Of a DNA stretch of 64,000 bases, positions 75 through 59,800 are shown piece by piece. A model generated the notes under the pieces. It searched no databases. It was not told where the DNA came from and saw nothing but the letters and a program-made list of their open reading frames with translations. The position numbers and the translations under genes were made by a program. This stretch comes from Heptranchias perlo (lineage: Eukaryota). The number at the start of each line of letters is the position of its first letter. Positions within the stretch are counted from its first letter, which is position 1. The DNA lies in contig NC_090351.1 of assembly GCF_035084215.1 (NCBI RefSeq), forward strand, positions 33,852,001 through 33,916,000. The letters run 5' to 3'.

Positions 75-122
75 TCATCTTGCCACGTTGGCCGACCTGT
101 GGTGATCTGATTCGTTGAGTAG
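75..122 (-). CDS. Gene A terminal exon, short cytoplasmic tail LLNESDHHRSANVAR*
   Basis: acceptor ttttcactttcag, phase 0, TGA at 75-77; conserved in genes B and C. Confidence 0.7.
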   Translation of the reverse strand, partial: LLNESDHHRSANVAR

Positions 123-3100
123 CTGAAAGTGAAAATATTTAATGCATCAGATTCATTGATATTGAGAAGTGTGCGTTATTTTACATGTCAGTTCTGAACA
201 GAATTCTATCTGAAACTGTTAACAAGTTGAGGAAAGGCCTGCGATAGACTGGAGCTGTGTTGAGATCACACTCCTCCCTCCCCCATCACCATTGCACGTG
301 TGCTGGGAAAAGGTGTCAGTTGTGCCCCTTTTGCTGGAACACCATTTTCTCACATTCAACATGGGTTTTTCTGCAACCGTGACGGTGGACAGTTGACATC
401 AGAAAACGGTTGACTTTATTAAATATATTTTAGATAGTCCAGTTGAGGTTCCCAGCAACAATAGAATTAGGTCTGTGTCTGAGCACCCTGGTGCTCGACT
501 GGATAAACAAATCAGAATGGAATCTTTTCTTGACTGTATTAGTACAGCTTGGCTCAGTGGTAGCACTCTCATTTCAGATGTCAAAAGGTTGTGGGTTCAA
601 GTCCCAGTCCAGGGACTTCAGCACATAATCTAGGCTGGCACTTCAGCACTGTGCTGAGGGAGTGCTCTATTGTCAGATGAAACGTTAATGGAGGGCCCCA
701 TCTGTTTGTTCAGGTGGACAGAAAAGATTCCATGACACTATTTGAAGAAGAGCAAAGGAGTTCTCCCAATATTCTGGCCAAAACAGATTAACCGGTCATT
801 TATCTCATCTGCTGTGTTTGGGACCTTTCTGTGTGCAAATTGTCTGCCACTTTTGTCTCCATAACAACAGTAACACTTCAAAAGTAACTCATTGGATGTA
901 AAGAGATTGGGACATCTTGAAGATATAAAAGAGTCTATATAAACGCAGGTTCTTTCTTTATTATATCTGTGACAAATATTTTTGAAAGAATTTTTGGAGT
1001 GTTTCATACAAAGTCCTTAATCCTTACCTTAGTTTTTCTCGTACACGTTGTGACCGAAACAGTACAAATCACCAGGAGAGCAAAGAGCACCCAGCGTAGC
1101 ACACTCCACACAATGTAACTGAGCAAAAGGGGAGAAATACAAAATCATTCACAAGAAACGGGATTGCTTTGTGTCTGAAACATTTATCTCCTGTTTACAC
1201 TGTAATCTTAGTATTTTGTATCAATGTAAAGCCGCAGAACCAAGGGACTTTAGCTGGGAAACTAAACTGTTGTTTGACTTATGGAGGAAAGTCAACTTTG
1301 TGATCATTAGATAAAGGCCAAATGAAGCAAAGTTCATTAACATGTCCACAATGTGCAGCTATAAAGGCACGGCACAATTTTATAATTGAGGACTTTATAA
1401 AAGTGACTGACCATCTGCCTGGGGCCATGTAACAGTGGTAATATGTCTCCTCAGGGATGATCACAATAACATCAACCTGCAACTGCTCATCTGCACCTTC
1501 TTTCAGGCAATTGCTGAGCAGCTGGAAACAGGCAGCCTTCCCGTTCTCTCAGTTTGGAAACAGTGTATAACATGGGCAAACTGAGAAGGTGAAAATGACG
1601 GAGAATGCAAATGCCACTCCAGAATAGTGGAAGGCAAACCAGCATTGCTGGGGTTTGGCAAGTACAACTCATCTCACGCCATGAGATTAGGTTAGCGGTA
1701 AAGTAATGAAGGTGAATAATGCAAACAGCACCACCTGAGGGGTGGCAAAATGGAGGTGCTTACTTCTTATTCTGATTCTCCACCAACAAAAATAGCACCT
1801 TTGTTCGGAAGCCAACACAACAGCATGATGTAAATCCAGCCACCATTTCCATTATGGTGAGTTATAGCCTGGATGAGTAAATGTTTGTGAACCCTTGTGC
1901 CAAATTTCTTAAAGAACATTTATTCTCTCAGATGGAAACAGTGCCAATCAAAACACCAGCAATGAGAACATTGTACCTTTTGCTGGCAGATGTGGAACCT
2001 GAAGATGTGGTTCGATTTTCAGTGGAATTGATATTTTTACTTGTGGAACATGGAGTTGTTGGTGACACTTTTGAATAAACTTCACATTCATATACAAGTC
2101 CTATTGAGGCAAGGGAATAAAGTTTAGATTCACCTGATTTTCACTTGTGGTCAACCTAGAGAACACTATTGTTAAAAGGAACCTCAGTACTTGAGTAAAA
2201 TCCTGGTTGGTATATTGGATTTGGATGCTTTCATTTCTGTGTAATTTCCCCTCTCTGATAGCAAGGAGAGATGCTGCTAACACCTGGCAGCGGCCCATTT
2301 TTAGTGATATTTCAGTTATTTCCCCATATCCGAGTGTTTGCATTACAGAATTACTATTGGGACAGTTAAAGATCTCGGGTTGGTGGGTCTACAAACCAGA
2401 TATTCCCTTTTTTGCCCCACGCAAACGTAAAGGAAAGTTAGAGCCAGGGAATGATCTCTGCCACCACCGGAAAGTGTATTCCTGGGCGCCTAGCAACCGC
2501 GATGCTGCCCTGGAGCGATGTCCTCAGTGGAATAGGAACATCAGCAGTGCATTGAGCTCATCGGGAAATATTAGACCAATAATTACTGTTGTCGATATTA
2601 GTAGACAAGCAGTTAAAATTCGTAAGGCATTCCTCGTTTAAAAGAATGTTTCATTCAGAACAGCAGATAAAGGAATGTCACACGCACACATTAAACAGTC
2701 GCCTGCTAATACTGACAACGGTCAATTCTAGCCTTTTGGGGTCAGTTTCCTGAGCTTGCCAAGTGATGGGAAACCTCAGCCACCGGGAGTGGATATCGCA
2801 TATCAGGGACAGGCTCGCAAACAGATGCAATAGACATTAGTTTTAAAAATTCAGTTCCCATATTGTTTGTTTAAAGTAACACTTACCAATGCTGCTGATT
2901 CGAGCCACATAACTGCAGTTTTTCTCTGATCTGTTCCAGACTGACACATCAACCATTTCACTGGATTTTCCTCCATTATTATTTGAGGCTCTGCAGTAAT
3001 ATTGATGATGAACTTGGGTGAAGGAAGAACATTGTAGATCCAGTTTATCAGATTCAGAGATCGTTAAATCTTTAGACGTGGCCTTTTTATACCATGTGTA

Positions 3101-6100
3101 CTGAATGGGAAGGGACCCTTGGACAGACTCACAGGAGACTGACACTGAGCCCCCAAAACATGAGGCACTTGATGGTGATAAAAATCGAAGTACAGGAACA
3201 GACACAGATTCTGTGGGAAAGAAACAAACATTCAGACACTGACTGACTCTGCTTCTTGCACTGGATCCAAACTATCCCTGATCTTTAATGGGATGAGAGA
3301 GATTAAATAGCCTTCAAAAGCACCTGAAAGAAGAGGAACAATTGTGCAAGTTTTTGCTTTTTTTGAAAAACAGCAGCATAATTGATCCAGATGGAAATAA
3401 TCTTCTCATCATTTTTGCTTTGATGAAACCCATCATGAATTTGCCAGGTTGGAGCAGTCTATGGGGTAGAAATTGGGATGTGTTTTGTTCCAATTCCGGG
3501 CGTAAAATGGTGCAACGTATACCAATTGCTGGGCGTGAAGTCCTGTGCCCGATTTGCATTGGGGCATGCCCACTGCCCTATTGGTCGACTCTGTTTTTAG
3601 GCGTCCCTAGTGGTCGCCTGAAAGCAGCGTTGCATTAATTTAAATATGCAAATAAGGGTCCTGGGCATGTTTTAGGAACCTTCTGCAAAATTTTTGAGAA
3701 ACTAGGCAGAGCATACACCGTGAATGTTCTGACGAGCTTACCCAGCTCTACAGTGGCCTAACCAGAGTTCCTTAAAGAGACCCGTGGAGATCACTGAAGA
3801 ATCGCGACTGCGCTCGGTCCCCCAGCGTTTTCCACCGGTGTCCAAGCAGGACTTTCCTGAGGGCCGCTGGTGAATAGACAGCAGGCTCAAATTTGATCCC
3901 CAATGTTGGAAGTAGCCAGCAGCTCGCCTCTATTATCAAAATGAGGCCAATTTCAGATGAGCCTCAGGCCTCTGGCTTCTTGGGGCGCGCTTTCAGCCTG
4001 TCGCTTATTTTGGGTCCAGAAATGAGCCCAAAAGAATTTCCAACCCTATTGTTTTCAGGTGGGGGTTTGGTCGAATGTTGAATGCATTTCCAGGAATGGC
4101 CTGACCCAGGTCCAGTTTGTACCAGAACTCCCTCATATGGGAATTCTGCAACCAACATCGAAAAATCAAATGCTTTCCAATGTTCATTTTACTTCTGAGA
4201 CAAAACCAGAATAAGCTTTCCTGTAACTCAGCCAGGCCCTGCCATTTTGGAACCTCACCAGCACATCTACATCTCCATGTCTCTCCATCCTGCGAGCAGC
4301 CTGAACTACCATGTCTAATATCAGAACATAGCAGGGCTCCAGATCAGGAGAGCAGTAATGATACTGGGGATGTGTCAATTTGAAAATCAGGGCTAACAAT
4401 TTCTCTCAGTGGTAGGTTACCAGCCTCCAATGCTGTTTAATTGTTTGACACTCGAACATGAGCTAGTTGGAGAAAGTCCGAGAAACCACAGCAGAATATG
4501 AGTGCAAAAAACTGGAGATTTCTACACATGTTCTGTGGCTTTAGACAGGGAGAGTAATTATGATTGGTTTCAGCGAACTGCAGCTGAAAAGCAACCCTTT
4601 ATCTCAGTTTTATTGGAGCAGCCAAAGCACAAAGGTGACCAGCTTGACACTTTCAATGAGAATTGTCAGGTCTTCAGTGCTGTTGCGGCCACACCCTGTT
4701 CTCAGAAACTGATTAGGACAAAATTTGCTTTGTGACTGGACAGTCTCTCTTTGAAATGTTACTGCTTGCCGACCTGTCCCTCAGCACTTCCCGACTCACC
4801 CACCCAGATCCATTGAAAAATCAATAGGAGGTGTAGAGGATGTAGAAGATTGTATTTAGTATTTGATCCTTCAGGAGGTTTGCTTAGGAGGAAGATAATG
4901 GGCCATAATTTGCTGTGGCAGAGCATCCAACGGTGTTTGCCGTTGGTTAGACTTGCCCTTGCTCGTTTAGGTTTCAAATTGTTTGCGGGTAAGTTACTGA
5001 AAGTGCGAGTTGATAACATCGCAGCGAGGGAAACAGGGCATCTGGGACCTGAGTGGACAGAGCAAGAAACCATGTATCTCCTTCACCAGTCAGATTCAAG
5101 GATTTTGAAATAATCAATGCAAGGATTGAGAAGGAAGTGTAAATGACAATGGATTGAATGTCCAATCAGGTACAGAAAGAGAAATAAAGAGAGGGAAAGA
5201 AGGATTGGATGAAGAGAGAAAGAAAAAGGAAATGTACATTTTTAAAATCTCCAACTACAATTAAAACCTGAAGGATTGAAACTCCACACTTGTAAGTTTT
5301 CAGTGCCAAAGAGGTTGCTTGGCAGTAAATAACACTTATCACGTTGTTAAAAGGGTACTCAGACTTGAAATGACTTGACTCAACTTACTGTGGAGAGTTT
5401 AATTTGTATCTACCGTGCAAATACAGCAACTTCATGCCGTTCAATGTATTTCAATGGTGCGGCAGACAGCAAGATGCCCTTTTTGTAAAGCTAAGGGCAG
5501 AACGGTGCAACTTGGACAGCAACTTTTGGATTTCTGTGTTAACCAGGCATCTGCCCCTCGCCTGAATTTGCTGCACCATTTGCGTGTAAATAATGGCGAT
5601 CGCCATTAGTCTCACCGCTATTTTGACAGCAAAATCTGGCCCAACGTGACAACATGAATAAAGAGGCTTCTTTTACCATCAAGAGAGTGATCTAGCTTTT
5701 CAATTTTAAGTTTAGCTCGCTTGTAAAGTTGAACTGTATTGTGCTGAACTAAGTATCTGGTTGATTCTGTATGCCTCCCATCATATCACGAAACCTACAA
5801 AAATCTGTTACGCTCATGTGGATTGATTCCATTTTTAGTGTTTTCTAGGTATTTATCCCATTAATGACTACTTGCTTCTTACTGCTTTTGTTATTGTCTT
5901 TCTATCAGTTTAGCCTGAATGTAAACATCTGACAGTGTGAAATTTGATACAGTTCAGAGACAGGAAGATGTGTTGAGCATCCATGTGAGGTCTGGTGTAA
6001 TACACTGCAGTTAAAGTAACTGTTGGTCCCATAATACGTGAAATTTTTGGTTGGATAGTTGGACAGGCCACGAATTGCGTGTGAGCAACACGAGTCGTGT

Positions 6101-8690
6101 TTCCAGACCTCTGCCCACTTCCTGGAAGACTCTGCACTGCTGCGGAGCCTCGGGAAATCAGTGCTGTATTTTTCTTCCCAGATGAAACATTGAACAGACG
6201 TTTTAGTCGTGTATAATAAAGTATATCACTGAGAAAAGTACCGTAAGATATTTGTAGCCATAAGTTAAACCTTGGATTGATGCCAGATCGTTCAATACCA
6301 CAGCTGTACCATCCGCTATCTCCCAAGCGAAGATCCTTCATAGTAACAACGAATATTCCTTCTCTCTTGTTATCTGTGATTGACATTCTTCCTCGCTGTC
6401 CATCTTGCTCACTTGTTTTTACTAAAATTGAACAATCAACAGTCCAGCCATGACACCAATATTTCACATATGACCGGTACGTATGTTTGTCATAGTGACA
6501 GTCTATTGTGATCGCTCTTCCCACAACTCCATTTACATTTTTTTTTGCCCACAATGCACCTGAAACTGAGGAGACAACACTTCAGAAATTGAACAGGAAG
6601 TAACTGCTAAATACAAACAGATACATTTTAATAAGAACTTCCACTGTGTACAGAAGAATCTCTCCACTACGTCCATTAATACAGTTGAATTCCTTGTAGT
6701 TTGTGATGAAAGAAAGAACATTAATTTCGTGCCTTATCACATCCTCACGATGTCCTAAAGCACTTCCCAGCCAGTGAATTACTTTTGAAGTGTAGTCACT
6801 ATCGTTAAACAAGAACAGCAACAACAGCTTGCATTTATATAGCACCTATAACATAGAAACACAAGCGAAGATATAATCAAAAGTAAATGGACATTGAGCT
6901 AAGTCAGGAGATATTAGGAGAGGTGTGTAACAGCTTGGTCAAAGAGGTGGGTTTTAAGGAGGGTCTTAAAGGAGGAGAGGTGGGGGATTTCATACAGGGA
7001 ATTTCACAATGTAGCGCCAATGAAGGCAAACCCATTCCCACTAATGGTGGGGCAAATGTAGGGATCGAAGCACAAAAGATCACAGTCAGCGGAAGGGAGA
7101 TCTCGTGAGGGAGTTGGTGAGTCGGGCTGAAGGAGGTTACTCAAATAGTGAGGGGCCATTTCATGAAGGAATTTAAACACAAGGATGAAAGTTTGAAGTT
7201 TTGAGAGACCGAAAGCCAATGTAGGTCAGCAAGGACAGGGGTGATAGATGAGCGGGACCTGATACGGGCAGCAGAATTTTGGATGCGTTGATGTTTATGG
7301 TGGGTGCAAGAGGGGAGGCAGGCCAGGAGAACATTGGAATAGTTCAATCTGGAGGCAACAAAGACATGGATGTGGGTTTCAGCAGCAGACGGGTGGAAGT
7401 AGGCAGACTTTGTAATGAACTTGATATCTGCAGGAAAAGTGCTCCAGATTGTCTGTAAGATCAATGAGCAAGACCTCGAGGGTATTAATCACAGGATTAT
7501 TCCCAGTGCCACATGGTAATCAGTATAAGAATAGTAAGATAAGAGAAGTAATTTTGTGACTGGAGAGATGGTTCAGAAGAAAAGGGTTCATATTCCTGGC
7601 ACCTTGGGACCAGGTGTGGAAGAGGAGCATCCTGTAGAGGACGGGAGGAGTTTACTTGAACAGCGCCAAGACCAATGGCCTTGCTGGGAGAGGAACTCAT
7701 GCTGTGGGCAAAGAGTTTACTCCCAAATGGCAGGAGGGTGGTTAAAAATAAGCTGAAGAGGCACGAGGAAGAGGACGGAGGGCTGAGGATATAGGATAGA
7801 TAAAAGAGGGAAATGGGGAGGGGAAAGAGAACAGATCAGAAAGAGGAAGGTTTGAAAAGAGGAAGATTGCCATAACAGAGGCGTGCTTCAGTTGAATGTT
7901 CAAAAAGTATTCTGCATAAAATTGGCAAGTTGAGGCACAAATATTTATGGGGAGGTTTGATATAATAGAATTAACAGACTCATGGCTTAGAGTCGGGTGA
8001 GACTGGGAGTTTAACATTGCTGGTTACAAAATAGATTAGTCCAAAATGGTGGCGGGGAGGCAGTATTAATCAGAAATTCCATTACAGCATTAAATCATAA
8101 AGATGATATGGGGCTGAATCTACTTGGTTAGAGTTAAAGAAGAAGAAGAAAACGGTTCCTTATTAGGAGAGTAATATCGACCAAACAGTGGGCGTCCTCT
8201 CCCAGTGAGGAACAGTTTCACTGACAGAGCTTCGTTAAACAATATTTCATCGGCTGTACTTTAAATAACGAAAACAGTTGCAAATTTGTGACATTTTCTA
8301 TTTGAGGGATTATTACCACTGCAGTCTTCAGTGTATATTGGACTTCAGACTACATTATAAAAGTCACTTTTTTACGGATTAAAACTGGTTGCCTTTGCAT
8401 TTTGATTGTTGCTTTTGCAGCTTTTAAAAAAATGAAATGGAACCTTTATTTTCCACTCACAATTAAGAATGCATTTTCGTCTGGCAAATAATACAGTGAA
8501 AAAGAGATACAAGACTATATGCAAATGTACTTCTGCTGAGTATTTTGTGCCTTTACATTTCTCCAAATATTTAAACATCTCTGCTGTTTAAACCATACAC
8601 GAGACTTAAACTAATACTGATTATCTGAATATCCAGCTCTGGCGGTCACTCACCGGGCAGGGAACAAATGAGAAGAATCAGAATCCGCAT
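75..8690 (-). CDS. Gene A: CD300/pIgR-like (MDIR-type) V-C2 activating immune receptor, 315 aa predicted
   Basis: Exons 8654-8690, 6242-6565, 2887-3210, 1977-2100, 1028-1118, 75-122. All introns are GT-AG with matching phases (1,1,1,2,0), giving 948 nt open to TGA. Encodes signal peptide, V, C2, stalk, Arg-containing TM and short tail. Confidence 0.88.
545..960 (+). mobile_element. tRNA-derived SINE (DeuSINE/SacSINE-like) in last intron of gene A
   Basis: A box TGGCTCAGTGG, B box GGTTCAAGTCC, L2-like tail ending aaacgcaggttctttcttt. Confidence 0.8.
1028..1118 (-). CDS. Gene A exon 5, transmembrane segment with Arg
   Basis: SYIVWSVLRWVLFALLVICTVSVTTCTRKTK; acceptor ttttgctcag, donor gtaagg; phase 2-0. 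Confidence 0.9.
1977..2100 (-). CDS. Gene A exon 4, Ser/Thr-rich stalk
   Basis: GLVYECEVYSKVSPTTPCSTSKNINSTENRTTSSGSTSASK; acceptor cctcaatag, donor gtacaa; phase 1-2. Confidence 0.85.
2887..3210 (-). CDS. Gene A exon 3, Ig C2-type domain (FcR/FCRL-like)
   Basis: VSVPVL..VSCESVQGSLPIQYTWY..YYCRASN..SSEMVDVS; acceptor tttcccacag, donor gtaagt; 324 nt. Confidence 0.92.
3463..4046. mobile_element. Harbinger-like MITE (copies ~18359-18942, ~33141-33723, ~39298-39880)
   Basis: imperfect TIRs GGGGTAGAAATT / AATTTCCAACCC with flanking 3-bp TAT repeat. Confidence 0.55.
4900..5642. mobile_element. Harbinger-like MITE (copies ~19795-20538, ~34562-35504, internally deleted ~40724-41047)
   Basis: TIRs GGGCCATAATTT / AAAATCTGGCCC; 3-bp AAT flank (best preserved in the 35.5-kb copy). 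Confidence 0.55.
6242..6565 (-). CDS. Gene A exon 2, Ig V domain of CD300/pIgR type
   Basis: ITIDCHY..KYWCHGWTVDC..DSGWYSCGI: canonical B/F Cys plus the extra C-C' Cys pair; acceptor ctcctcag, donor gtactt; 324 nt, phase 1-1. Confidence 0.93.
6810..7430 (-). mobile_element. L2 LINE 3' fragment in intron 1 (copies ~21615-22245, ~36450-37105, ~42210-42835)
   Basis: L2 C-terminal motifs HVFVASRLNYSNVLLA..IQNSAAR..ITPVLADLHWL; (TGT)n tail. Confidence 0.8.
8654..8690 (-). CDS. Gene A exon 1, signal peptide MRILILLICSLP
   Basis: ATG at 8690, hydrophobic codons, phase-1 donor GTGAGT; conserved at 23442-23478 and 44062-44098. Confidence 0.85.
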
Positions 8691-8719
8691 TGTTTTATTC
8701 ACAAAGAAGAGATCAGCAC

Positions 8720-8840
8720 TTGTCGTCAGTCACCCAGCTCTTCGTTCTCATATCTAAATAAATATCTTCATGATGCGAGGAATTTAAATGAGGAAGAAAG
8801 TAGCAGGAAGCCAGATCGTGAAACCGCAGGAAGCCAGGCG
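8720..8840 (-). promoter_or_regulatory. Putative proximal promoter of gene A (ETS sites, RUNX-ETS composite, TATA-like)
   Basis: GAGGAAG 8790, CAGGAAG 8804 and AACCGCAGGAAG 8822-8833, 100-145 nt upstream of the ATG; homologues at ~23510-23630 and ~44130-44250. Confidence 0.45.
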
Positions 8841-9217
8841 ATGAAATGTTACCCCTGAGAACTTGAAATATTGTCAGTTATATTTAACAAACAAAACTAA
8901 ACTAATTTTCATCAATGAATAGAAAATTGTGAAAACAGGAATGTGAAAATGTTAACAGGAATGGAGAATGGCGACCCAAGCAAAGTATTTATGCTGAATT
9001 GTGAGGTGACATCCAGAACACAAGTGAGAAAAAAACCTCAGACAAGTGTTGAGATTGGCAGGAAGATTCAATCCCCTCTCCTTCCCACAGTTTACTGTGT
9101 ATGGAAACTAGTTTCACAGATAAAACAGTTAATGCTGTGCTTATTAACAGCATGAAGAATGTCTGGCCACATAGTCGGAAATCCCGTAAAGTCACATGTT
9201 AAGTGTCAGAATCATAT

Positions 9218-9680
9218 CAACAACAACAACAACTTGCATTTTTATAGCACCTTCAACACAATAAAATGTTTCACGGTGCTTCACAGGAGCGATTGTCATG
9301 CAAAATTTGGCACCAAGACACATAAGTCGATATTAGGACATGTGACTAAAAGCTTGGTCAAAGAGGTAGGTTTTAAGGAGCATCTTAAAGGAGGAGAGAG
9401 AGATAGAGAGGGGGAGAGGTTTAGGGAGGGAATTCCAGAGCTTAGGGCCAATGCAGCTGAGGGTACGGCCAGCAATGGTGGAGCGATTAAAATGGGGGAT
9501 GCGCTAGAGTCAAGAATTGGAGGAGCGCAGAGATGGTGGTGGTGAGGTAGAGCTGGGTGTGATCAGCGTACATGTGGAATCTGACGATGTGTTTTCAGAT
9601 GATGTCACCGAGGGGCAGCATGTAGATGAGAAATAGGTGGGTCCAAGGATAGATCCTTGTGGGACTCCAGAGGTAACATC
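9218..9680 (-). mobile_element. L2 LINE fragment (copy ~24005-24470)
   Basis: [15 protein letters not shown] motif, L2 3' end with (AAC)n. Confidence 0.75.
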
Positions 9681-9845
9681 GGGCACACTACCCATGATTT
9701 CCTGTTTGTTAACGTTAATGGATGGTGACATGGACTCTGGGACATTTCCAGCCACCATGTTCTTTTACATGGGTGTCGGGTTGTGATACATTGTCCTAGT
9801 GTGCAGCACCACACAGTAATGCATACAGTTCCACATCCACTGTTC

Positions 9846-10723: not shown

Positions 10724-10829
10724 CTCATCTCCAAAAGATAAGATTCTTCCCCATTGGCAGGGAAAGTAAATTAAAAGCGATTGTATCCTTGAACATTTTT
10801 AAGTCGCTCTTTGGATACAAAGTGTCTTC

Positions 10830-12080: not shown

Positions 12081-12084
12081 TTTC

Positions 12085-12312: not shown

Positions 12313-12409
12313 TGAAGCTCGTCTCTGGACCGAGATTGCCCTCAGACCCGGCCGTATTTCCAGCACTTGGTTATTTTACACAGGGGAGGTCGACTCATTG
12401 GTCACCATC

Positions 12410-14959: not shown

Positions 14960-15007
14960 TCATCCTGCCACGTTGGCCGACCTGTGGTGATCTGATTCGT
15001 TGAGGAG
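14960..15007 (-). CDS. Gene B cytoplasmic exon LLNESDHHRSANVAG*
   Basis: paralogous to 75-122. Confidence 0.7.
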   Translation of the reverse strand, partial: LLNESDHHRSANVAG

Positions 15008-18000
15008 CTGAAAGTGAAAATATTTAATGCATCAGATTCATTGATATTGAGAAGTTTGCGTTATTTTACATGTCAGTTCTGAACAGAATTCTATCTGAAA
15101 CTGTTAACAAGTTGAGGAAAGGCCTGCGATAGACTGGAGCTGTGTTGAGATCACACTCCTCCCTCCCCCATCACCATTGCACGTGTGCTGGGAAAAGGTG
15201 TCAGTTGTGCCCCTTTTGCTGTGACACCATTTTCTCACATTCAACATGGGTTTTTCTGCAACCGTGACGGTGGACAGTTGACATCAGAAAACGGTTGACT
15301 TTATTAAATATATTTTAGATAGTCCAGTTGAGGTTCCCAGCAACAATAGAATTAGGTCTGTGTCTGAGCACCCTGGTGCTCGACTGGATAAACAAATCAG
15401 AATGGAATCTTTTCTTGACTGTATTAGTACAGCTTGGCTCAGTGGTAGCACTCTCATTTCAGATGTCAAAAGGTTGTGGGTTCAAGTCCCAGTCCAGGGA
15501 CTTCAGCACATAATCTAGGCTGGCACTTCAGCACTGTGCTGAGGGAGTGCTCTATTGTCAGATGAAACATTAATGGAGGGCCCCATCTGTTTGTTCAGGT
15601 GGACATAAAAGATTCCATGACACTATTTGAAGAAGAGCAAAGGAGTTCACCCAATATTCTGGCCAAAACAGATTATCCAGTCATTTATCTATCTCATCTG
15701 CTGTGTTTGGGACCTTTCTGTGTGCAAATTGTCTGCCACTTTTGTCTTCATAACAACAATAACACTTCAAAAGTAATTCATTGGATGCAAAGAGATTGGG
15801 ACGTCTTGAGGATATAAAAGAGTCTATATAAACGCAGGTTCTTTCTTTATTATATCTGTGACAAATATTTTTGAAAGAATTTTTGGAGTGTTTCATACAG
15901 TCCTTAATCCCTACCTTAGTTTTTCTCGTACACGTTGTGACTGAAACAGTACAAATCACCAGGAGAGCAAAGAGCACCCAGCGTAGCACACTCCACACAA
16001 TGTAACTGAGCAAAAGGGGAGAAATACAAAATCATTCACAAGAAACGGGACTGCTTTGTGTTTTAAACATTTATCTCCTGTTTACACTGTAATCTTAGTA
16101 TTTTGTATCAATGTAAAGCAGCAGAACCAAGGGACTTTAGCTGGGAAACTAAACTAGTGTTTGGCTTATGGAGGAAAGTCAACTTTGTGATCATTAGATA
16201 AAGGCCAAATGAAGCAAAGTTCATGAACATGTCCACAATGTGTAGCTATAAAGGCAAGGCACAATTTTATAATTGAGAACTTTATAAAAGTGACTGACCC
16301 TCTGCCTGGGGCCATGTAGCAGTGGTAATATGTCTCCTCAGGGATGAAAGGTTTATCACAATAACATCAACCTACAACTGCTCATCTGCACCTTCTTTCA
16401 GGCAATTGCTGAGCAGCTGGAAACAGTCAACCTTCCCGTTCTCTCAGTTTGGAAACAGTGTATAACATGGGTAAACTGAGAAGGTGAAAATGACGGAGAA
16501 TGCAAATGCCACTCCAGAATAGTGGAAGGCAAAACCAGCATTGCTGGGGTTTGGCAAGTACAACTCATCTCACGCCATGAGACTAGGTTTGGGGTGAAGT
16601 CATCATGGTGAATAATGCAAACAGCACCACCTGAGGGGTGGCAAAATGGAGGTGCTTATTTCTTATTCTTATTTTCCACCGACAAAAATAGCACCTTTGT
16701 TCGGAAGCTAACACAACAGCATGATGTAAATCCAGCCACCATTTCCATTATGATCAGTTATAGTCTGGAACAGTAAATATTTGTGAACCCTTGTGCCAAA
16801 TTTGTTAAAGAACATTTATTTTCTCAGATGCAAACAGTGCCAATCAAAACACAAGCAATGAGAACATTGTACCTTTTACTGGCAGATGTGGATCCTGAAG
16901 ATGTGGTTCGATTATCAGTGGAATTGATATTTTTACTTGTGGAACATGTGGTTTTTGGTGATACTGTTGAAAAATCTTCACAAGTATATACAGGTCCTAT
17001 TGAGGCAAGGGAATAAAGTTCAGATTCACCTGATTCTGACTTGTAGTCAACCTAGAGAACACTATTGTTAAATGGAACCTCAGTACTTGAGTAAAATCCT
17101 GGTTGGTATATTGGATTTGGATGCTTTCATTTCTGTGTAATTTCCCCTCTCTGGTAGCAAGGAGAGATGCTGCTAACACCTGGCAGCGGCCCATTTTTAG
17201 TGATATTTCAGTTATTTCCCCATATCCGAGTGTTTGCATTACAGAATTACTATTGGGACAGTTAAAGATCTCGGGTTGGTGGGTCTACAAACCAGATATT
17301 CCCTTTTTTGCCCCACGCAAACGTAAAGGAAAGTTAGAGCCAGGGAATGATCTCTGCCACCACCGGAAAGTGTATTCCTGGGCGCCTAGCAACCGCGATG
17401 CTGCCCTGGAGCGATGTCCTCAGTGGAATAGGAACATCAGCAGTGCATTGAGCTCATCGGGAAATATTAGACCAATAATTACTGTTGTCGATATTAGTAG
17501 ACAAGCAGTTAAAATTCGTAAGGCATTCCTCGTTTAAAAGAATGTTTCATTCAGAACAGCAGATAAAGGAATGTCACACGCACACATTAAACAGTCGCCT
17601 GCTAATACTGACAACGGTCAATTCTAGCCTCTTGGGGTCGGTTTCCTGAGCTTGCCAAGTGATGGGAAACCTCAGCCACCGGGAGTGGATATCGCAAATC
17701 AGGGACCGGCTCGCAAACAGATGCAATAGATATTAGTTTTAAAAATTCAGTTCCCATATTGTTTGTTTAAAGTAACACTTACCAATGCTGCTGATTCGAG
17801 CCACATAACTGCAGTTTTTCTCTGATCTGTTCCAGACTGACACATCAACCATTTCACTGGATTTTCCTCCATTATTATTTGAGGCTCTGCAGTAATATTG
17901 ATGATGAACTTGGGTGAAGGAAGAACATTGTAGATCCAGTTTATCAGATTCAGAGATCGTTAAATCTTCAGACGTGGCCTTTTTATACCATGTGTACCGA

Positions 18001-29748: not shown

Positions 29749-29796
29749 TCATCTTGCCACGTTGGCCGACCTGTGGTGATCTGATTCGTTGAGGAG
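29749..29796 (-). CDS. Gene C cytoplasmic exon
   Basis: LLNESDHHRSANVAR*. Confidence 0.7.
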   Translation of the reverse strand, partial: LLNESDHHRSANVAR

Positions 29797-49452: not shown

Positions 49453-49577
49453 AAATAATTAACAATGAGCAAGTCCCAAAAAAGTCAGGATTTAAACGGT
49501 ACAGCTCCATAAGTGGAACAACCAAATTTCTCAGTAACAAAAACTGCACATTGTGGACATTCAGGAAACCTCAGTTG

Positions 49578-50840: not shown

Positions 50841-50932
50841 CTTAATTTTTCTTTGTGCAACACGTGACTAAAATAGCACAAATCAGCAGAAGTGCAAAGA
50901 GCGTCCAACGTAGCCAATTCCAGATAATGTAG
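50841..50932 (-). CDS. Gene D TM exon (Arg), stop codon 1 nt before donor
   Basis: [29 protein letters not shown]; acceptor ttttgtccag, donor gtaagg; 92 nt vs 91 in paralogues. Confidence 0.85.
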
Positions 50933-53900
50933 CTGGACAAAATGGAAAAATATTAAATCAATCAATGGGAGGGGAGTAATATTAAGGGATATTGGGATTT
51001 CTGGTGGCAAATAATTTATCACTCAGAAACTGCCATTTTCACTAGCTCCAGGACTTTTCATAGAAAACTGTAGTACTCAGACTGGAACTCATGCTATCAA
51101 TGTGTGGAAATACATGGCATTTACAATAGAATGTCACAGAGTGCCAAAACACTCCTCCCGATAAGGGAGAAGGAGTGTCCGGACCTTAAAGGATAGTGTT
51201 TATTAGTAAATCTGTGGAAAATAATGACAAAGGCAAAATAGAGAGAGAAATGATAAAGCAGAGAGAGAAAAGTTCAGTATTTTATACTAGAATGTGGCTT
51301 TGCGGGATTGGAAAGTTAAGCGCTGAAAGAAAAGTCATGAGAGACCAGGCTAAACCAAGGTTAAAATTAAACCAAGATTAGGAATTAAAAACTATTGGGG
51401 GAGAAATTGGTTAGTGTCCAACTACAGGCACGTAGGAACATCAGGAACAGGAATAGGCCATTCAGCCAATTAGATCATAGCTCATCTGTCCCTCAACTCC
51501 AGCACGAAATGGGTAACACAACTGCAACACAGTGCAAGCTCCGTCTAGTTTTTCACCAATTTCAGATCAGGGTCCTACAACAGGCGTTAGGCCCCTGATT
51601 AGCATATGGAAAGGGGGCAATCTCCTGTTTCAGGTGGAGCCCGGGACCTCTAAATACCGCCCGATCCAATTTCGCATTTGGTGTACTTCAGGGGTGATTC
51701 GGGCACAGGACATAGTGCACCAAAATTGGTAGGTTTTTCGCCCACTCTAAGCCCAAAAAGTGGCAGCTGTCTCCTTGGCTTCAGGACTGGTCCTCTCTTG
51801 ATGCTGCTTGCTTGCCTTGTTGCTCAGCTTTCTCTTGTTGCTCAATTAAAAGGCCTCAATCTATAGCAATGTTCTGCAGTATACCGTAACTATTTTTCCA
51901 ACCTTCCATGGGCAATGTGGCAATTCACCTCCTGAGCAGTCCAACCATATGAAGCGCTAACTCAGAATCTCAATCATTTGCTCAGTGTTGTTGAGACAAG
52001 GGTATCATTATATCCTTGCGTGGCTTAGTATGGGAGTGGTGTTCACTCTATACCCTACGCCTCTCAAGTCTTCCTGTTAAGAGAACGGAGCATTAACTTG
52101 TATGATTCCCATCCGTGCATCACACATCTGTACATTGATTCAATGATGTATGTAATGTCTCTCTGTCTGAACACTATTCAACTCCTTTGATCGCCTTGAT
52201 AACGGGCAGTTGGAAAGATTATCTGTAATCACCAGGCATTGTTCTCTGACTATATATGCGGTACCTTTCATGGAATCCCACACTTACCTGACGAAGGAGG
52301 AAGCCTCCGAAAGCTTGTGATTTTAAATAAAGCTGTTGGACTATAACCTGGTGTTGTAAGACTCCTTACATTGATTCAATGGAATTCCTTTTGATTGATA
52401 TCAGGATTGTGGTTTAGTGACTGAATGTGCATAGCAAATGATGCGCTGCACCTTTGGAAACCTACAAACACAATGAAGAGCAAACAGCCTTGGCTGCTGT
52501 TTCTGTTTGGTATTGCTGAATTTTATGTACCCATGTGCGTGCCTTTGGAAGGTTTCTGTAATGTCCCTTGTGCAACAGTTGACAGCATTTCCCTTGACTC
52601 CTGAGATGTCAGCCACTTCGTTCCTGGAAGGTATATAAAATGTTGAGAGCTGTGGTAACTATGACTTCAAATAACAGTACAGTTTTACTGCTTCTTCAGG
52701 TCTTTTGGGAGCACATCATGTCGATTAATTAAGAAATCTTTGCTCAGCTCTAGCCTCTCCTTCTCTAAGATTCATAAAACTACATCTAGCTTAGTAATGC
52801 TTCCCTCTGGGGTAATTTGTCCACACCATGGTGCGCCTCCCACATCCCCATCACACCTGCCTGCTGTTTCTTCCAACTGTATCACCTGGTGTCCAATGAA
52901 TGATGCTTACCTGCAAAAAGCCCCTGTAATAATGCAGTTCTTCTTCTCCCACTTGCAAATGCAACCCTTCACTTGGTAACGAACACCTACTGTCATTGTA
53001 CATTCACAGGTTTTTTTTTACATATCCACCATGAGAAAATCAACACATTTTTCTTGCAGTTTCAAACCACCATGGACATCACAAGCTGCAACACACATTT
53101 TCTCAGCATCCAACTTTTTATTTTACATTGCTCGACAACCTTGATGTATTTGAGGAGTTAATGGAATTGTAGTAAAACTGAATTTGTGTTCATTTAGGAT
53201 GGAACATTTATTCACAGCATTCTATGCACAACAAAAAATTCTTAACTTTTTAAAGGAGGAGGAAAATACAGGCCTCTGAAGGCAATCTATTGTACATGCA
53301 TAAAGTTTTCACTCTTAACAAAACTAAAGGGATATACCTCTCATTGACAACAGCAGTGGCTTGAGAAGCACTTTCAGTTATTCTTGTTGACTCATTAGTT
53401 GGATTAGGCTTTACACTTGTAATTGTGCTTGTATTTATTGGAAAATCTTCACAAGTGTAGGTCGTATTTCCTACAACGGGGAAAAACATATTCTTATTTT
53501 GACCAGCAGATCGCGCGTGGTGGTATGTCAGAAAATTCCATGTAATGGTGAAACATATTATTAGGGCTACTGATTGCCAGTGAATGAATAAGTCAAATTG
53601 CATATTTATTACAGGTGTGTTAGTGATATTTTCAGGCTTGAATTCTATGATTATGTCCATATTTGTATGGGAACTATAAATTAGTGCCTTGATTACTATA
53701 AAAGTTAATTGAACTATGTACTTAATTTTATCTCTTACTTTTCTAAAGCTCAGAATAAGATGGCAGGAAAGATGTTTCACGTTGCAGTTAGTTAGGTCGT
53801 AGTTTTACGAACTGTGTGTAGTGGTAGTGGGAGTAGTGTTGGGAGGGTGTCCCTGCGGTTTGGGAGCGCGGTGGGGGGGCGGAAGGGAGGTGCTGTGATT

Positions 53901-56900: not shown

Positions 56901-59800
56901 GGTTCACTGATCGTGGAACACAATTCCATCTCTTGAGGCTATACTTGTCTAAAAATTTAAAGTTGAATTAACTTTTAAAACATTGCAAAATTACAAAATA
57001 CCTCACTCTTAGTGGCAAGAGAACCGGTTGTGGACCTAGCTGAGGGACACAGGCGTCAAATTCCCATGGACGTTCTCCCGATAGTCCATTGTAATTTCCA
57101 TGAAAGATCCACAGAAACCTGGGAGATGCTTTACCGGGGTTTCCCGTGGATCTTCCACAGAAATTACGGAGGATGATTGTGAGAATCCCCGCAAAAGTAC
57201 GCCTCCACAGTTTTAGAGGCGTAACATGGCTACCTATAGTGAGGTGACTGATAGTTAATGATCGTGGTAAGTATAAATTAACAGGCATTACTCAGGTGTG
57301 ACAGAGTGGTGACAAAATCGTGACACAATAAGCAAGCGTGACAACGGGTAGTGCATGTAGCTACAAAATAATATACACAACAAAATAATAGGGTTGTAAC
57401 ATAAAGTTTAAATTGAATGGTGGTTAATACCACACAGAGAACAAAACATTGTTCTTTCTTTATGAATAAGGAACATCAAAAAGTGATAATTGGGTTCTAC
57501 TATAAGTGCTAATATCATTGTTGTGTAATCATATTTAATGAAGTTTATATCAATACACGTCCTTATTTGTGGAGCTAATGTTTCCATTCAAAATTAAACT
57601 TTTACAAAATTAAAACAGTTCACATAAAAAAAGAATATAAGACAACATCTGTGTCCAGCTGACAATTGTAAATTTGGATTTTCCCATGTACATGCAATCA
57701 CTGAAGACTTTGCACACATTTTCCTTTACAGATTTTAGATGCAGTATCAATAATAATCAAATTAGATTGTGTAACTTTTAGCTATTAAAGATGTGAATAC
57801 CAAGTTTGATTTTACTCACATGTTTGCAGTGTTAACAATTAAATCAAATTGACTTTAATGCTGTAAATATGCCAGCAAATAAGTGCAAATGATTTGTTTT
57901 ATTTTAGTGTTCAGTTAATGAGGGAAAAATGATTTTAAGTGAAAAAACACTTACCAGTATTGTGGATTTGCACCAAATACCTACAGTTCTTCTCTGCTGC
58001 CTTTCCGAGTGACACTTTAACCATTTCACTGGATATTGTGCCATTAGTATTTGAGGCGCTGCAGTAATATTGCTGATCCTCAGAGATATGCTTGCACTGT
58101 AGATCCAGGTTATTAGAGCGGGAAATCTCTGCATCTTTACTTTGCATCTTTTTATACCAAGTATAAGTGATAGGGAGGGATCCATGGAGTGACTCGCACG
58201 AGACTGAGACTTCAACGCACGGAGCATTTGGGGGGTACACAAATTTAAGAAGTGGCTGAGAAACGACTTCTGTCAGGAGGGGGGGGTGGTGGAGAAAGAG
58301 TCTGTTAGACAGAGTTGGCAACTAGCAGCGAGTGAGGTTAATATCCTGCATCACATAATATATCTGGCTCTGAGGGAGCTGTTTGTGCTGTTTACTTTTC
58401 TTGAAATAAAAAAGTTACCAAAGCCCATTCCAATTTTTTGTTAAAGTTTCTGCGCATTAAGAATAAAGCACTTAGATATTGTGCCCCAGTCAATCGTCTC
58501 ATGAATCCTAATCCGAGACTGCTTCTTTAGCATAATCTTCCTTCCACAAAGCCTCGCAATGACCTCTTCCCAAGTCATTTAAATACGGACCCAATGGGAT
58601 TTCAGATTTTTTGCTGGTGGTGTGGGGACCACAGGCTGGCCTGACAAAAAACCTTTCCGGATGTTCCCTGGCTGGTGGGCCCATCTTCAAATGGCAACTG
58701 ATTTTTCTTGGAGTGATTACCGTTTGAATATGGCGTTGGACCCACACGTAGCCCTGTATGGCAAGTTCGACCGCTTTGTCAGGAGTACTTACCACTGGCT
58801 GTATAGGAGGCTTAGCTGGCGGAATTTCCTGACACGCCCACAAAAGTGACATTGGAACGTAGGGAGGGAGGGAGGGCAGAAAAACCACCCACCCCGCCCC
58901 TCCCGCTTTGGAAGTTCTTAGGGATCAAGTAAGCAGCAGAAAGCAGTCCGGCCTAATTTCCTGCAGCCCCCCCCCCTCCCCCCCCCTCCCCCAACAACAC
59001 ACAAACACCGCAGCAAGGGAAACCCCAAGGAAATTCACACCCTACGGAGGCCAAAACTGAACACAGTTCTCCAGGCATAGCCTCACCAAGGCCAGATACA
59101 ACTTTAACATCACCTCCTTTGACTTATCTGTCACATCCTTCACTACACATTGCAACATTTTATTTGCTTTCTTGACTGCCTGTGAACACTGAACTGACAT
59201 CCATTAAACCCCCCCCCCACCCCCCCCCCACAACCCAAGATCTTTTTCTGGAAGTATAATTTAACCTCATACTCCACATTATTGCTTCTTTGACGTAATC
59301 ACATGACTTTACATTTATCCAGGTTGAATTCTACCTGCTCCCTCTCAGCACATTGACCTACCTGTCCAGGTCCCTTGGACATCTTGGACAATGTTTTCAC
59401 TTAAAGGACAGAATAATCAAAAACAAAGGTTAATAGTAGAGTATAATAAGAATAAATGGCTCAGATAAAGTACCTTCGGATATTTGTAGATACACAGCAA
59501 ACATTGAATCGAATCCAGTCCTTTCGATACCACAGTTGTACCATCCTGTATCTGCTGAACTAAGATTCTTCATAGTAACAACAAATATCCCTTGTGTCTT
59601 GTCATCTTTAATTGATACTTTTCCTTGCCGCCCAAACTGCATATTTGTATCAACTATCATATTACAACCAGTGCGATACCACTTATGACACCAATATTTC
59701 TTGTATGACTCGTATGTCTGGTTGTTGTAATGGCAGTATATTGTAAGTGTTCTTCCCACAACACCTGTTACATTTTCTTCTGCCCACAAGGTACCTGAAA
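50842..59800 (-). CDS. Gene D: divergent V-C2 receptor paralogue (5'-partial; leader not found in window), nearly tailless
   Basis: Exons 59474-59800 (V), 57955-58269 (C2), 53338-53470 (stalk), probable 52531-52623, and 50841-50932 (TM, TAA at 50842-50844). Confidence 0.78.
52146..52366 (+). mobile_element. Short Penelope-like element insertion with 15-bp TSD
   Basis: TACATTGATTCAATG at 52131-52145 and 52367-52381; contains hammerhead core and AATAAA. Confidence 0.75.
52284..52320 (+). ncRNA. Minimal hammerhead ribozyme motif (Penelope type)
   Basis: TTAC-CTGACGA-A-GGAG-gaagc-CTCC-GAAAGCTT-GTGA: conserved core boxes, stem II GGAG/CTCC, stem I TTAC/GTGA, palindromic AAGCTT. Confidence 0.65.
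52531..52623 (-). CDS. Gene D candidate extra stalk exon (phase 2-2, 93 nt)
   Basis: acceptor tataccttccag, donor gtacat, open frame [32 protein letters not shown]. Confidence 0.5.
53338..53470 (-). CDS. Gene D stalk exon
   Basis: [44 protein letters not shown]; the YTCEDF motif matches gene B; phase 1-2. Confidence 0.82.
53940..54577 (-). mobile_element. CR1 LINE 3' fragment
   Basis: ORF 54035..54562 [30 protein letters not shown]. Confidence 0.92.
54830..56262 (+). mobile_element. Degenerate L2 LINE
   Basis: [44 protein letters not shown]; frameshifted; (GTT)n tail. Confidence 0.85.
56320..56560. repeat. Degenerate ~60-70-bp tandem repeat (TATTCAGGGCA-AT-rich)
   Basis: TATTCAGGGCA at ~56386, ~56454, ~56515, each followed by T(A/T)AATT-rich sequence. 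Confidence 0.55.
57955..58269 (-). CDS. Gene D C2-domain exon
   Basis: [35 protein letters not shown]; acceptor ctcctgacag, donor gtaagt; 315 nt. Confidence 0.9.
59474..59800 (-). CDS. Gene D V-domain exon
   Basis: [37 protein letters not shown]; acceptor cttcttag, donor gtactt; 327 nt. Confidence 0.92.

What the first reader, a model, noticed from the sequence alone, without database searches (positions are those of the whole stretch)
75..59800. Actively expanding cluster of hybrid CD300-V / FcR-like-C2 activating receptors
Seen: four colinear genes combine a V domain with the pIgR/CD300 extra Cys pair (KYWC-x6/7-C), a C2 domain with the FCRL-like CES-x-x-GS-x-PI-x-Y motif, a mucin-like stalk, a TM with Arg and a tyrosine-free short tail. 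Known: mammalian CD300s have a single V domain, and skate MDIRs are modular CD300-related receptors. Inference: this is a lineage-specific innate receptor family, probably uncharacterised, diversifying by duplication, domain-number change, loop mutation and tail loss, with all four modes visible in 60 kb.
Basis: partly seen in the sequence, partly recalled or inferred. Interest (0 to 1): 0.8.

Follow-up and report, generated by a model that had tools for sequence, protein, structure and literature searches.

The report
Shark MDIR activating-receptor gene cluster
This stretch of sevengill-shark DNA holds four tandem genes of the MDIR immune-receptor family, first described in skate in 2006; the genes are real and recently copied, and one shows exactly how a four-domain receptor arose, but the family is already known.

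Summary
The minus strand carries five V exons and five C2 exons, which make four genes. Genes A and B are two-Ig genes. Gene 3 is a four-Ig gene (V-C2-V-C2). Gene E is an older, divergent two-Ig gene. Every exon is open and has GT-AG splice sites.

The V domain is of the CD300/pIgR type and has the extra Cys pair. The C2 domain is closest to FCRL5 domains. A Ser/Thr-rich stalk follows, then a membrane span with Arg and a short tail without tyrosine.

Both domains are 43-60% identical to skate MDIR2, MDIR3 and MDIR5, and the leader, membrane-span motif and tail motif are shared. Relatives occur in sharks, rays, skates and a chimaera. Gene 3 is already a RefSeq model, XP_067863711.1, and matches it exactly exon by exon.

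The scan had already filed a neighbouring cluster, 60 kb away on other DNA of this genome, as MDIR.

New here:
- The DNA junction that made the four-Ig gene (38447-38450) joins intron 3 to intron 1 across a 3-bp microhomology.
- Second V domains of four-Ig family members are not one clade (AU p = 4e-6).
- Identity between the copies is mosaic, 85-100%.
- Gene E lost its tail through a +1 insertion.

RNA support is partial. Signalling through an adaptor is inferred.

The parts
8654..8690 (-). Gene A leader exon (MRILILLICSLP + 1 nt), donor GTGAGT
6242..6565 (-). Gene A V exon (CD300/pIgR-type V, KYWC-x6-C), phase 1-1
2887..3210 (-). Gene A C2 exon (FCRL-like, CESVQGSLPIQY; post-domain Cys in EKNCSYV), phase 1-1
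1977..2100 (-). Gene A Ser/Thr-rich stalk exon
1028..1118 (-). Gene A membrane-span exon with Arg (YIVWSVLRWVLF...)
75..122 (-). Gene A tail exon LLNESDHHRSANVAR + stop
23442..23478 (-). Gene B leader exon
21139..21462 (-). Gene B V exon (KHLC instead of KYWC)
17783..18106 (-). Gene B C2 exon
16873..16996 (-). Gene B stalk exon
15915..16005 (-). Gene B membrane-span exon with Arg
14960..15007 (-). Gene B tail exon (LLNESDHHRSANVAG + stop)
44062..44098 (-). Gene 3 leader exon (MQILILLICCLP); at least 2 kb of upstream homology to A and B is kept
41646..41969 (-). Gene 3 V1 exon (repeat copy D)
38725..39048 (-). Gene 3 first C2 exon (copy D); its donor must reach V2 because copy D has no stalk or membrane-span exons
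38447..38450 (.). Fusion junction: intron 3 of copy D (A-equivalent 2608) joined to intron 1 of copy C (A-equivalent 7664), 3-bp microhomology AGC
37254..38355 (+). 5'-truncated LINE fragment inserted in the fused intron; absent from the same place in A, B and D
36104..36421 (-). Gene 3 V2 exon (copy C). It uses the second AG, because the first acceptor CCTCAG is mutated to CTTCAC. W to C at residue 3. It has no leader exon of its own.
32565..32888 (-). Gene 3 second C2 exon
31654..31777 (-). Gene 3 stalk exon
30704..30794 (-). Gene 3 membrane-span exon with Arg
29749..29796 (-). Gene 3 tail exon
59474..59800 (-). Gene E V exon (KYWC-x7-C), 57-60% identical to the other sevengill V domains
57955..58269 (-). 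Gene E C2 exon
53338..53470 (-). Gene E stalk exon
50841..50932 (-). Gene E membrane-span exon with Arg. It is 1 nt longer than in A-C, which creates TAA just before the donor (…CTKKN stop), so the conserved tail is lost.

Best explanation
The window holds four tandem genes of the MDIR (modular domain immune-type receptor) family of cartilaginous fishes, in the sharpnose sevengill shark. All four are of the activating type. Each protein is a type I membrane glycoprotein. It starts with a CD300/pIgR-type V domain, which is probably the ligand-binding head. An FCRL-like C2 domain follows, then a short Cys-containing linker and an O-glycosylated stalk, then a membrane span whose single Arg lies in the outer third, and last a 21-residue tail without tyrosine. 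By analogy with mammalian CD300, LILRA, OSCAR and Fc-alpha-RI, the Arg should pair with an acidic residue of an ITAM-bearing adaptor chain, so that ligand binding activates the cell. An inhibitory partner with an almost identical ectodomain and four ITIM-like motifs (XP_067863712.1) is encoded outside the window, which makes this a paired-receptor system. The cluster evolves by unequal recombination of a 14.9 kb unit. Because every intron beside a V or a C2 exon is phase 1, a join between intron 3 of one copy and intron 1 of the next added a whole V-C2 module in frame and made the four-Ig gene 3. Shown here: gene structures, family membership, the fusion junction, the mosaic identity and partial transcription. 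Inferred: adaptor coupling, ligand class, cell type and selection.
For: Structure: all 26 exons are open, have GT-AG sites and fit in phase. Family: the V exon hits CD300LF at 2.7e-20, pIgR D1 at 3.5e-10 and NKp44 at 5.6e-8. The C2 exon has FCRL5 as best solved match (best single domain i-E 2e-5). BLASTP to skate MDIR2, MDIR3 and MDIR5 gives V 52-60% and C2 43-58% identity, E 1e-21 to 1e-43. The membrane-span exon matches MDIR5 and shark and ray relatives, and 32 of 127 family proteins carry RW.LF. Gene 3: each of its 8 exon peptides is an exact, contiguous piece of XP_067863711.1. Copy D lacks stalk, membrane-span and tail exons, and copy C lacks a leader. The junction is mapped to the base. 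RNA: run X1 has contigs on V1, the first C2 and V2, none on the 2.6 kb intron between V1 and C2, and a loose end at 39049 that equals the 3' end of a V exon. Paired partner: A's V domain is 98% identical to that of ITIM-bearing P0077. No ITIM exon lies in the window. Expansion: the V tree gives a sevengill-only clade (97), and identity in 600-bp windows between copies ranges from 85 to 100% and changes partner along the unit.
Against: No contig crosses the first-C2-to-V2 junction, and the runs are only guessed to be RNA. I could not show transcription of A, B or E individually, and I found no RefSeq protein for them at 90% clustering. Gene E has no leader in the window and a truncated tail. 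Gene B has lost the Trp of KYWC, although 18 of about 200 family V domains also have Leu there. pN/pS among copies is 0.8-3.1 on very few changes, which fits relaxed constraint as well as diversifying selection. No adaptor chain has been shown for sharks; a 2014 survey found no FcR-gamma in shark data (PMC4016189).
Confidence: 0.8

Rival explanations
1. Some copies are dead or dying duplicates rather than working genes. Gene E (no leader found, tail cut by a frameshift stop) and gene B (KYWC changed to KHLC) are the candidates.
For: No leader for E in 4.2 kb upstream, where a LINE with an intact 592-aa RT ORF sits. A +1 nt in E's membrane-span exon gives TAA. pN/pS is about 1 or above among copies. 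No RefSeq protein was seen for A, B or E.
Against: All four E exons and all six B exons are open with intact splice sites. E keeps every canonical Cys and Trp and the RW.LF motif after long divergence (57-60% identity), which argues for constraint. Leu in place of Trp occurs in 9% of family V domains. E's leader may simply lie beyond base 64000.
Confidence: 0.2
2. Gene 3 is not one gene. Copy D is a 3'-truncated fragment and copy C a 5'-truncated fragment, and the RefSeq four-Ig model is a merging artefact.
For: No contig spans the first-C2-to-V2 junction. Other RefSeq models of this family clearly merge tandem genes, with leader peptides inside proteins such as P0031 and P0043.
Against: V2 is only about 91% identical in DNA to the other copies in the window, yet run X1 holds contigs on it at 97% or more, although copy C has no promoter or leader of its own. 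Donor and acceptor phases fit, and a usable AG is kept. cDNA-derived skate MDIR5 has the same V-C2-V-C2 layout.
Confidence: 0.1
3. The genes are shark counterparts of pIgR or of an Fc receptor, as the RefSeq names 'polymeric immunoglobulin receptor-like' and 'Fc receptor-like protein 5' suggest, and they bind or transport immunoglobulin.
For: The V domain resembles pIgR D1 and D5, Fc-mu receptor and CD300. The C2 domain resembles FCRL5. Functional Fc receptors for shark IgM were reported in 1988 (cited in PMC6795676), while no classical homologue was found in sharks (PMC4016189).
Against: The tail is 21 residues with no sorting or transcytosis signal, and the membrane span has an Arg. The ectodomain alternates V and C2, unlike pIgR, where bony-fish hits are V-V only. 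The best single-domain V match is CD300LF, a lipid receptor, not pIgR. No binding data exist.
Confidence: 0.08
4. The tandem copies are an assembly artefact: haplotypes or collapsed repeats wrongly laid in series.
For: Long near-identical repeats are hard to assemble, and some 600-bp windows are 99.5-100% identical.
Against: Copies differ by 3-15% over most of their length, far above allelic levels. They carry private insertions (the LINE at 37254-38355) and private deletions. There are no N runs in the window. The RefSeq model spans copies D and C.
Confidence: 0.03

Closest known systems
Skate MDIRs (modular domain immune-type receptors; Cannon et al. 2006, Immunogenetics 58:362; MDIR2 ABC86796.1, MDIR3 ABC86797.1, MDIR5 ABC86800.1)
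   Same: Same two domain types in the same order. Same leader (M.I.ILL..SLPVSGALW). Same post-C2 Cys (C-S-Y/F-V) and Y-x-C-E stalk start. Same RW.LF membrane-span motif (MDIR5) and acidic D/N-E-S-D/E tail. ITIM forms exist as partners (MDIR2). Domain number varies in V-C2 steps. Identity is 43-60% per domain.
   Different: Another order of cartilaginous fish (Hexanchiformes). There is no 1:1 orthology, because the sevengill genes form their own clade. Gene 3's second V-C2 module was added inside the sevengill lineage and is not inherited from the batoid four-Ig form.
Mammalian CD300 / CMRF35-like molecules (CD300LF structure 6c74/1zox)
   Same: V domain with the extra Cys pair after KYWC. Best solved single-domain match (E 2.7e-20). 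Paired activating and inhibitory members. Mucin-like stalk.
   Different: CD300 proteins have one V domain and no C2 domain. From my own knowledge, activating CD300s use Lys or Glu in the membrane span, not Arg.
Polymeric immunoglobulin receptor (pIgR)
   Same: V-domain type; each of the five pIgR domains aligns (24-40 bits per domain, except D2 at 8-11 bits).
   Different: pIgR has only V-like domains and a long sorting tail. In this sample the bony-fish pIgR-like hits are V-V with no MDIR-type C2.
Fc receptor-like proteins (FCRL5, structure 9loc)
   Same: The C2 domain shares C-E-x-x-x-G-S-x-P-I-x-Y and the Y-Y-C-x-A-x-N core.
   Different: FCRLs have no V domain and carry ITIM or ITAM-like tails. 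The similarity is modest (best domain 27.8 bits).

Membership tests
MDIR (cartilaginous-fish modular domain immune-type receptors) | Sequence homology to the cloned skate MDIRs in every ectodomain type present | tested here: met
   V 52-60% and C2 43-58% identity to MDIR2, MDIR3 and MDIR5, E 1e-21 to 1e-43
MDIR (cartilaginous-fish modular domain immune-type receptors) | Modular ectodomain: variable number of Ig domains built from the same few domain types | tested here: met
   Two-Ig (A, B, E) and four-Ig (gene 3) forms in the window. Family-wide counts in the first 111 proteins: V-C 53, V-C-V-C 27. V-C-V-C-V-C forms appear among the later hits.
MDIR (cartilaginous-fish modular domain immune-type receptors) | Multigene family with charged-membrane-span (activating) and ITIM (inhibitory) members | tested here: met
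   Arg in all four membrane-span exons. ITIM partner XP_067863712.1 has a 98% identical V domain but is encoded outside the window. Among 127 family proteins, 32 carry RW.LF and 39 have two or more ITIM-like motifs.
MDIR (cartilaginous-fish modular domain immune-type receptors) | Placement inside the clade of cartilaginous-fish sequences that holds the skate MDIRs, apart from bony-fish pIgR-like proteins | tested here: inconclusive
   In the V tree rooted on chimaera the window's V domains sit among shark and ray sequences, with skate MDIRs in the batoid clade. Bony-fish hits are only 34-46% identical. No tree with CD300, TREM or pIgR outgroups was built.
CD300 / CMRF35-like | Ectodomain of a single V-type Ig domain | tested here: not met
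   Every gene has V followed by C2
CD300 / CMRF35-like | V domain with a second disulfide (Cys after KYW, partner 6-7 residues later) | tested here: met
   Cys35 and Cys42 (Cys43 in E); aligned with the pIgR and CD300LF Cys pair
pIgR | Tandem V-like domains only, plus a long cytoplasmic tail with sorting signals | tested here: not met
   V alternates with C2. The tail is 21 residues and the membrane span has an Arg.
pIgR | Binds J-chain-containing polymeric Ig | not testable with these tools
   Needs binding assays
FCRL | Ectodomain of C2-type domains only, with ITIM or ITAM-like tail | tested here: not met
   N-terminal V domain and a tail without Tyr; only the C2 domain resembles FCRL5

The most novel reading that the evidence does not exclude
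MDIR-type receptors could be the long-missing immunoglobulin (Fc or polymeric-Ig) receptors of cartilaginous fishes. They join the V-domain type used by pIgR, Fc-alpha/mu receptor and Fc-mu receptor to the C2 type used by FCRLs. The design already exists in chimaera. Functional Fc receptors for shark IgM were reported decades ago, yet no classical FcR, FcRL or pIgR homologue was found in sharks. The sevengill cluster would then be an Ig-sensing activating/inhibitory pair system whose domain number is tuned by adding V-C2 modules.
Probability: 0.08. Interest if true: 0.75.

Novelty: new member of a known kind. Interest (0 to 1): 0.3.

Why it matters
The finding corrects a likely misreading. These are not a new hybrid family. 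They are sevengill members of MDIR, which public annotation hides under the names 'pIgR-like', 'CMRF35-like' and 'Fc receptor-like 5'.

The useful additions are evolutionary. The window gives a base-level example of how a modular immune receptor gains a domain pair: an intron-3-to-intron-1 join, made in frame by uniform phase-1 introns. The tree shows that such four-Ig forms either arose several times or were homogenised within genes across cartilaginous fishes.

It also shows that CD300/pIgR-type V domains and FCRL-like C2 domains exist in sharks and chimaera. This qualifies the statement that these receptor kinds first appear in bony fish (PMC4016189). The 2006 MDIR paper had already made that point, as far as I remember its abstract.

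Tried and rejected
- **Leader for gene E.** I looked with blastn, tblastx, tblastn using 14 family leader peptides, and a scan for Met + hydrophobic run + phase-1 GT. Nothing convincing turned up in 59801-64000.
- **ITIM-tail exons in the window.** None at E up to 5.
- **Selection.** Nei-Gojobori pN/pS among copies is 0.8-3.1, but on only 1-5 synonymous changes. Intron divergence is as high as pN, so I make no claim of positive selection.
- **The new Cys in V2 as a recurrent compensation for the unpaired post-C2 Cys.** Rejected as a pattern: only gene 3 has Cys there among 83 aligned internal V domains.
- **B's Trp-to-Leu as a sign of a pseudogene.** Weakened: Leu occurs in 18 family V domains.
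- **The MDIR paper (PMC3701310) and the 2010 review (PMC2823954).** Not held. What I say of their content beyond PMC3031540 is from memory.
- **Literature on shark adaptor chains.** Nothing useful.
- **The look-up of encoding contigs.** Closed, so I could not see the RefSeq gene neighbours.
- **The large representative protein search, structure prediction and fold search.** Not used, because family scans and word searches had settled the identity.
- **The joined spliced protein.** Never built or searched. Exons were searched one by one by reference, and the full-length comparisons used database proteins.
- **Other limits.** No N runs occur in the window.
Full report
**What is in the window.** The window comes from the sharpnose sevengill shark, Heptranchias perlo. 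Earlier scan notes named the species, and the exact match of gene 3 to a RefSeq protein of that species confirmed it. A self-comparison shows a tandem repeat of about 14.9 kb:
- copy A: 1-14885
- copy B: 14886-29674
- copy C: 29675-37253, which lacks its 5' part
- copy D: 38447-46280, which lacks its 3' part

Long alignments between these copies are 87-97% identical. The window has no N runs. A much older relative, E, lies at 50841-59800. All genes are on the minus strand.

**Gene structures.** I placed the exons in three steps. I aligned the copies. I looked for exon conservation between the young copies and E. I laid family proteins on the DNA. The resulting table gives, for A and B, six exons: leader, V, C2, stalk, membrane span and tail. 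All have GT-AG sites, and the phases leaving successive exons are 1/1/1/2/0.
- **Leader:** MRILILLICSLP.
- **V exon:** passes Pfam V-set. It has the canonical Cys20-Cys86 pair and a second pair at Cys35-Cys42, after KYW.
- **C2 exon:** has CESVQGSLPIQY and ends in a post-domain stretch, EKNCSYV.
- **Stalk:** 40 residues, 17-19 of them Ser or Thr.
- **Membrane-span exon:** YIVWSVLRWVLFALLVICTVSVTTCTRKTK.
- **Tail exon:** adds LLNESDHHRSANVAR. There is no tyrosine.

No exon resembling the ITIM tails of family members exists in the window.

**Gene 3 and how it arose.** Copy D keeps its leader, V and C2 exons and at least 2 kb of upstream sequence, but it has no stalk, membrane-span or tail exon. 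Copy C has V, C2, stalk, membrane-span and tail exons but no leader. The two copies meet at 38447-38450. There, sequence that matches intron 3 of the unit (A-equivalent 2608) abuts sequence that matches intron 1 (A-equivalent 7664), and the two sides share the three bases AGC.

Both introns are phase 1, so the first C2 exon splices in frame to the second V exon. In that V exon the first of two acceptors six bases apart is mutated (CCTCAG to CTTCAC), and the second is used. A 1.1 kb 5'-truncated LINE fragment (37254-38355) was inserted later into the fused intron. It is absent from the same place in A, B and D.

Each of the eight exon peptides is an exact and contiguous piece of P0042, which is XP_067863711.1, 'polymeric immunoglobulin receptor-like [Heptranchias perlo]'. 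RefSeq has therefore already modelled this four-Ig gene. I compared exon by exon and never built or searched a joined model of my own.

**Gene E.** E has open V, C2, stalk and membrane-span exons with good splice sites. They are 57-60% identical to the other sevengill proteins and 43-54% to the skate MDIRs. Its membrane-span exon is one base longer than in A-C, which puts TAA just before the donor, so the protein would end at ...CTKKN and lack the family's acidic tail. I found no leader in the 4.2 kb upstream, where a LINE with an intact 592-residue reverse-transcriptase ORF sits. Whether E is complete cannot be decided from this window.

**Transcription.** One search found four runs of one sample that hold 10-14% of the words of a 6 kb stretch. 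In run X1 the contigs lie on V2 (36050-36249), the first C2 exon (38850-39049) and V1 (41650-41849). None lie in the 2.6 kb intron between V1 and the first C2 exon. The LINE fragment is covered heavily in all four runs.

A loose end just past 39049 reads GTAAGATATT. This is the reverse complement of the last bases of a V exon, so a V-to-C2 splice is seen. A variant at 39010 matches the second C2 exon of gene 3, so both C2 exons seem to be represented.

V2 is only about 91% identical in DNA to the other copies, so contigs at 97% or more should come from V2 itself. Copy C has no promoter of its own, so this speaks for the fusion transcript. No contig crosses the first-C2-to-V2 junction, and the runs are only guessed to be RNA. 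Support is real but partial.

**What family it is.** Against solved structures, the V exon matches:

| Solved structure | E-value |
|---|---|
| CD300LF | 2.7e-20 |
| CD300A | 2e-11 |
| pIgR D1 | 3.5e-10 |
| NKp44 | 5.6e-8 |
| TLT-1, Fc-mu receptor, TREM2 | about 1e-4 |

The C2 exon has FCRL5 as its best solved match. Six of FCRL5's repeated domains align with it, and the best one scores 27.8 bits. FCRL4 comes next. The 'hybrid' description is therefore accurate.

It is not new, however. Word searches found about 130 relatives in sharks, rays, skates, sawfish and the chimaera Callorhinchus. They carry automatic names such as CMRF35-like, pIgR-like and Fc receptor-like 5. Among them are the cloned skate proteins MDIR2, MDIR3 and MDIR5:
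- MDIR2 is V-C2 with ITIMs.
- MDIR5 is V-C2-V-C2 with the membrane span ...WKVGRWLLFLLLVI... and the tail ...KRDESEPRH...
- MDIR3 is V-V-C2-V-C2.

The window's V and C2 exons are 52-60% and 43-58% identical to these. Leader, post-C2 Cys, Y-x-C-E stalk start, RW.LF membrane-span motif and acidic tail are all shared. Among the first 111 family proteins, V-C is the commonest layout (53) and V-C-V-C the second (27). The bony-fish pIgR-like hits are V-V and lack this C2 type.

[quoted passage not shown] The original paper is not held. From memory, its abstract also names FcR homologues among the relatives.

The scan had already filed a cluster 60 kb before this window as MDIR. I tested the same claim independently on this window.

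**Paired partner.** P0077 (XP_067863712.1, the next accession after gene 3) has a V domain 98% identical and a C2 domain 94% identical to gene A's, but an uncharged membrane span and four ITIM-like motifs. It is not encoded in the window.

Its isoform X3 (P0133) joins an upstream gene's V-C2 to its own V-C2. Splicing between neighbouring genes can thus give the same four-Ig layout that gene 3 has fixed in DNA. Isoform X2 uses the second of the two V-exon acceptors. These are RefSeq models, and I could not see their evidence.

**Evolution.** In a V-domain tree rooted on chimaera, A, B, gene 3 V1, gene 3 V2 and P0077 form a sevengill-only clade (SH-aLRT 97). E branches near the base on a long branch.

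V1 and V2 are sisters within single proteins of Scyliorhinus (two proteins), Chiloscyllium and Leucoraja. Rays and skates share older V2 lineages. Holding all 20 second V domains together costs 540 log-likelihood units (AU p = 3.8e-6). I named the group after seeing the tree, which weakens the test. Either the V-C2 module was added several times, or V1 and V2 are homogenised within genes.

Within the window, identity between units in 600-bp windows runs from 85 to 100%, and the closest pair changes along the unit. B and C are 99.5% identical over A-equivalent 1-1787, while A and B are about 99% identical over 2387-3585. This is what unequal crossing-over and gene conversion produce. Some of that exchange is very recent.

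V2 and its flanking intron are about 9% diverged from all other copies, so the fusion is older than the latest exchanges. I give no dates, because I have no substitution rate for this lineage. 'Actively expanding' is plausible but would need population data.

**Selection.** Twenty-four of 105 V positions vary among the four young V domains. They cluster at 39-41, between the two extra cysteines, and at 90-100, the loop that corresponds to CDR3. pN/pS is 0.8-3.1 but rests on 1-5 synonymous changes, and intron divergence equals pN. Diversifying selection is possible but not shown.

**Mechanism.** The Arg lies in the outer third of the membrane span and is conserved from sevengill to skate within RW.LF, a motif present in 32 of 127 family proteins. 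From established knowledge of mammalian receptors such as Fc-alpha-RI, OSCAR, LILRA and NKp46, this is the arrangement that pairs with the Asp of FcR-gamma or CD3-zeta-type dimers. I infer the same here. No shark adaptor has been shown, and a 2014 survey reported none (PMC4016189).

The ligand is unknown. By analogy with CD300 it could be a lipid; by analogy with pIgR or Fc-mu receptor it could be immunoglobulin.

**Verdict.** This is a real and tidy cluster of MDIR genes. It consists of new members of a known family, with a nicely documented domain-pair gain. It is not a new kind of system.

Noticed in passing
60544-62319 (-): Intact 592-residue reverse-transcriptase ORF (Pfam RVT_1, 2.9e-39) of a LINE. 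It lies between gene E's V exon and wherever E's leader is, and it may be a young, possibly active element.
   Followed up: partly
8691-8705, 23479-23493, 44099-44113 (-): The 5'UTR just before the leader ATG reads GTGAATAAAACA + ATG, which would translate as VNKTM. The same or similar peptide appears at the N-terminus or inside RefSeq models of rays and sharks (P0002, P0005, P0031, P0043). Either the UTR is conserved across elasmobranchs or tandem genes have been merged by automatic annotation.
   Followed up: partly
6560-6571, 21457-21468, 41964-41975, 59795-59806 (-): The V exons have two in-frame acceptor AGs six bases apart (CCTCAG|TTTCAG|). RefSeq isoforms of the neighbouring inhibitory gene use one each (P0077 and P0132). 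Gene 3's internal V2 has lost the first.
   Followed up: yes
outside the window (P0133 = XP_067863714.1): A RefSeq isoform joins the V-C2 of an upstream gene to the V-C2 and ITIM tail of the inhibitory gene. Splicing between tandem genes may thus produce four-Ig receptors without any change in DNA.
   Followed up: partly
21139-21462 (-): Gene B's V domain reads KHLC where the family has KYWC. Leu at the Trp position occurs in 18 of about 200 family V domains; His at the Tyr position occurs in none of them.
   Followed up: yes
36413-36415 (-): Gene 3's internal V2 has Cys for the conserved Trp (GALC), 13 residues after the unpaired post-C2 Cys of the first C2 domain. It is the only one among 83 aligned internal V domains, so a compensating disulfide is only a guess.
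   Followed up: yes
15435-15848, 12177-12312, 49007-49451: SINE-like repeats that share a conserved core lie downstream of the membrane-span exons of B and E and also in the intergenic DNA. They account for the only non-exon similarity between E and the young copies.
   Followed up: no
4786-5779 (A-equivalent) = 34460-35640 in copy C: Intron 2 of copy C is only 85% identical to A, B and D over about 1 kb, much less than its flanks (92-97%). This piece of C has a different history.
   Followed up: no
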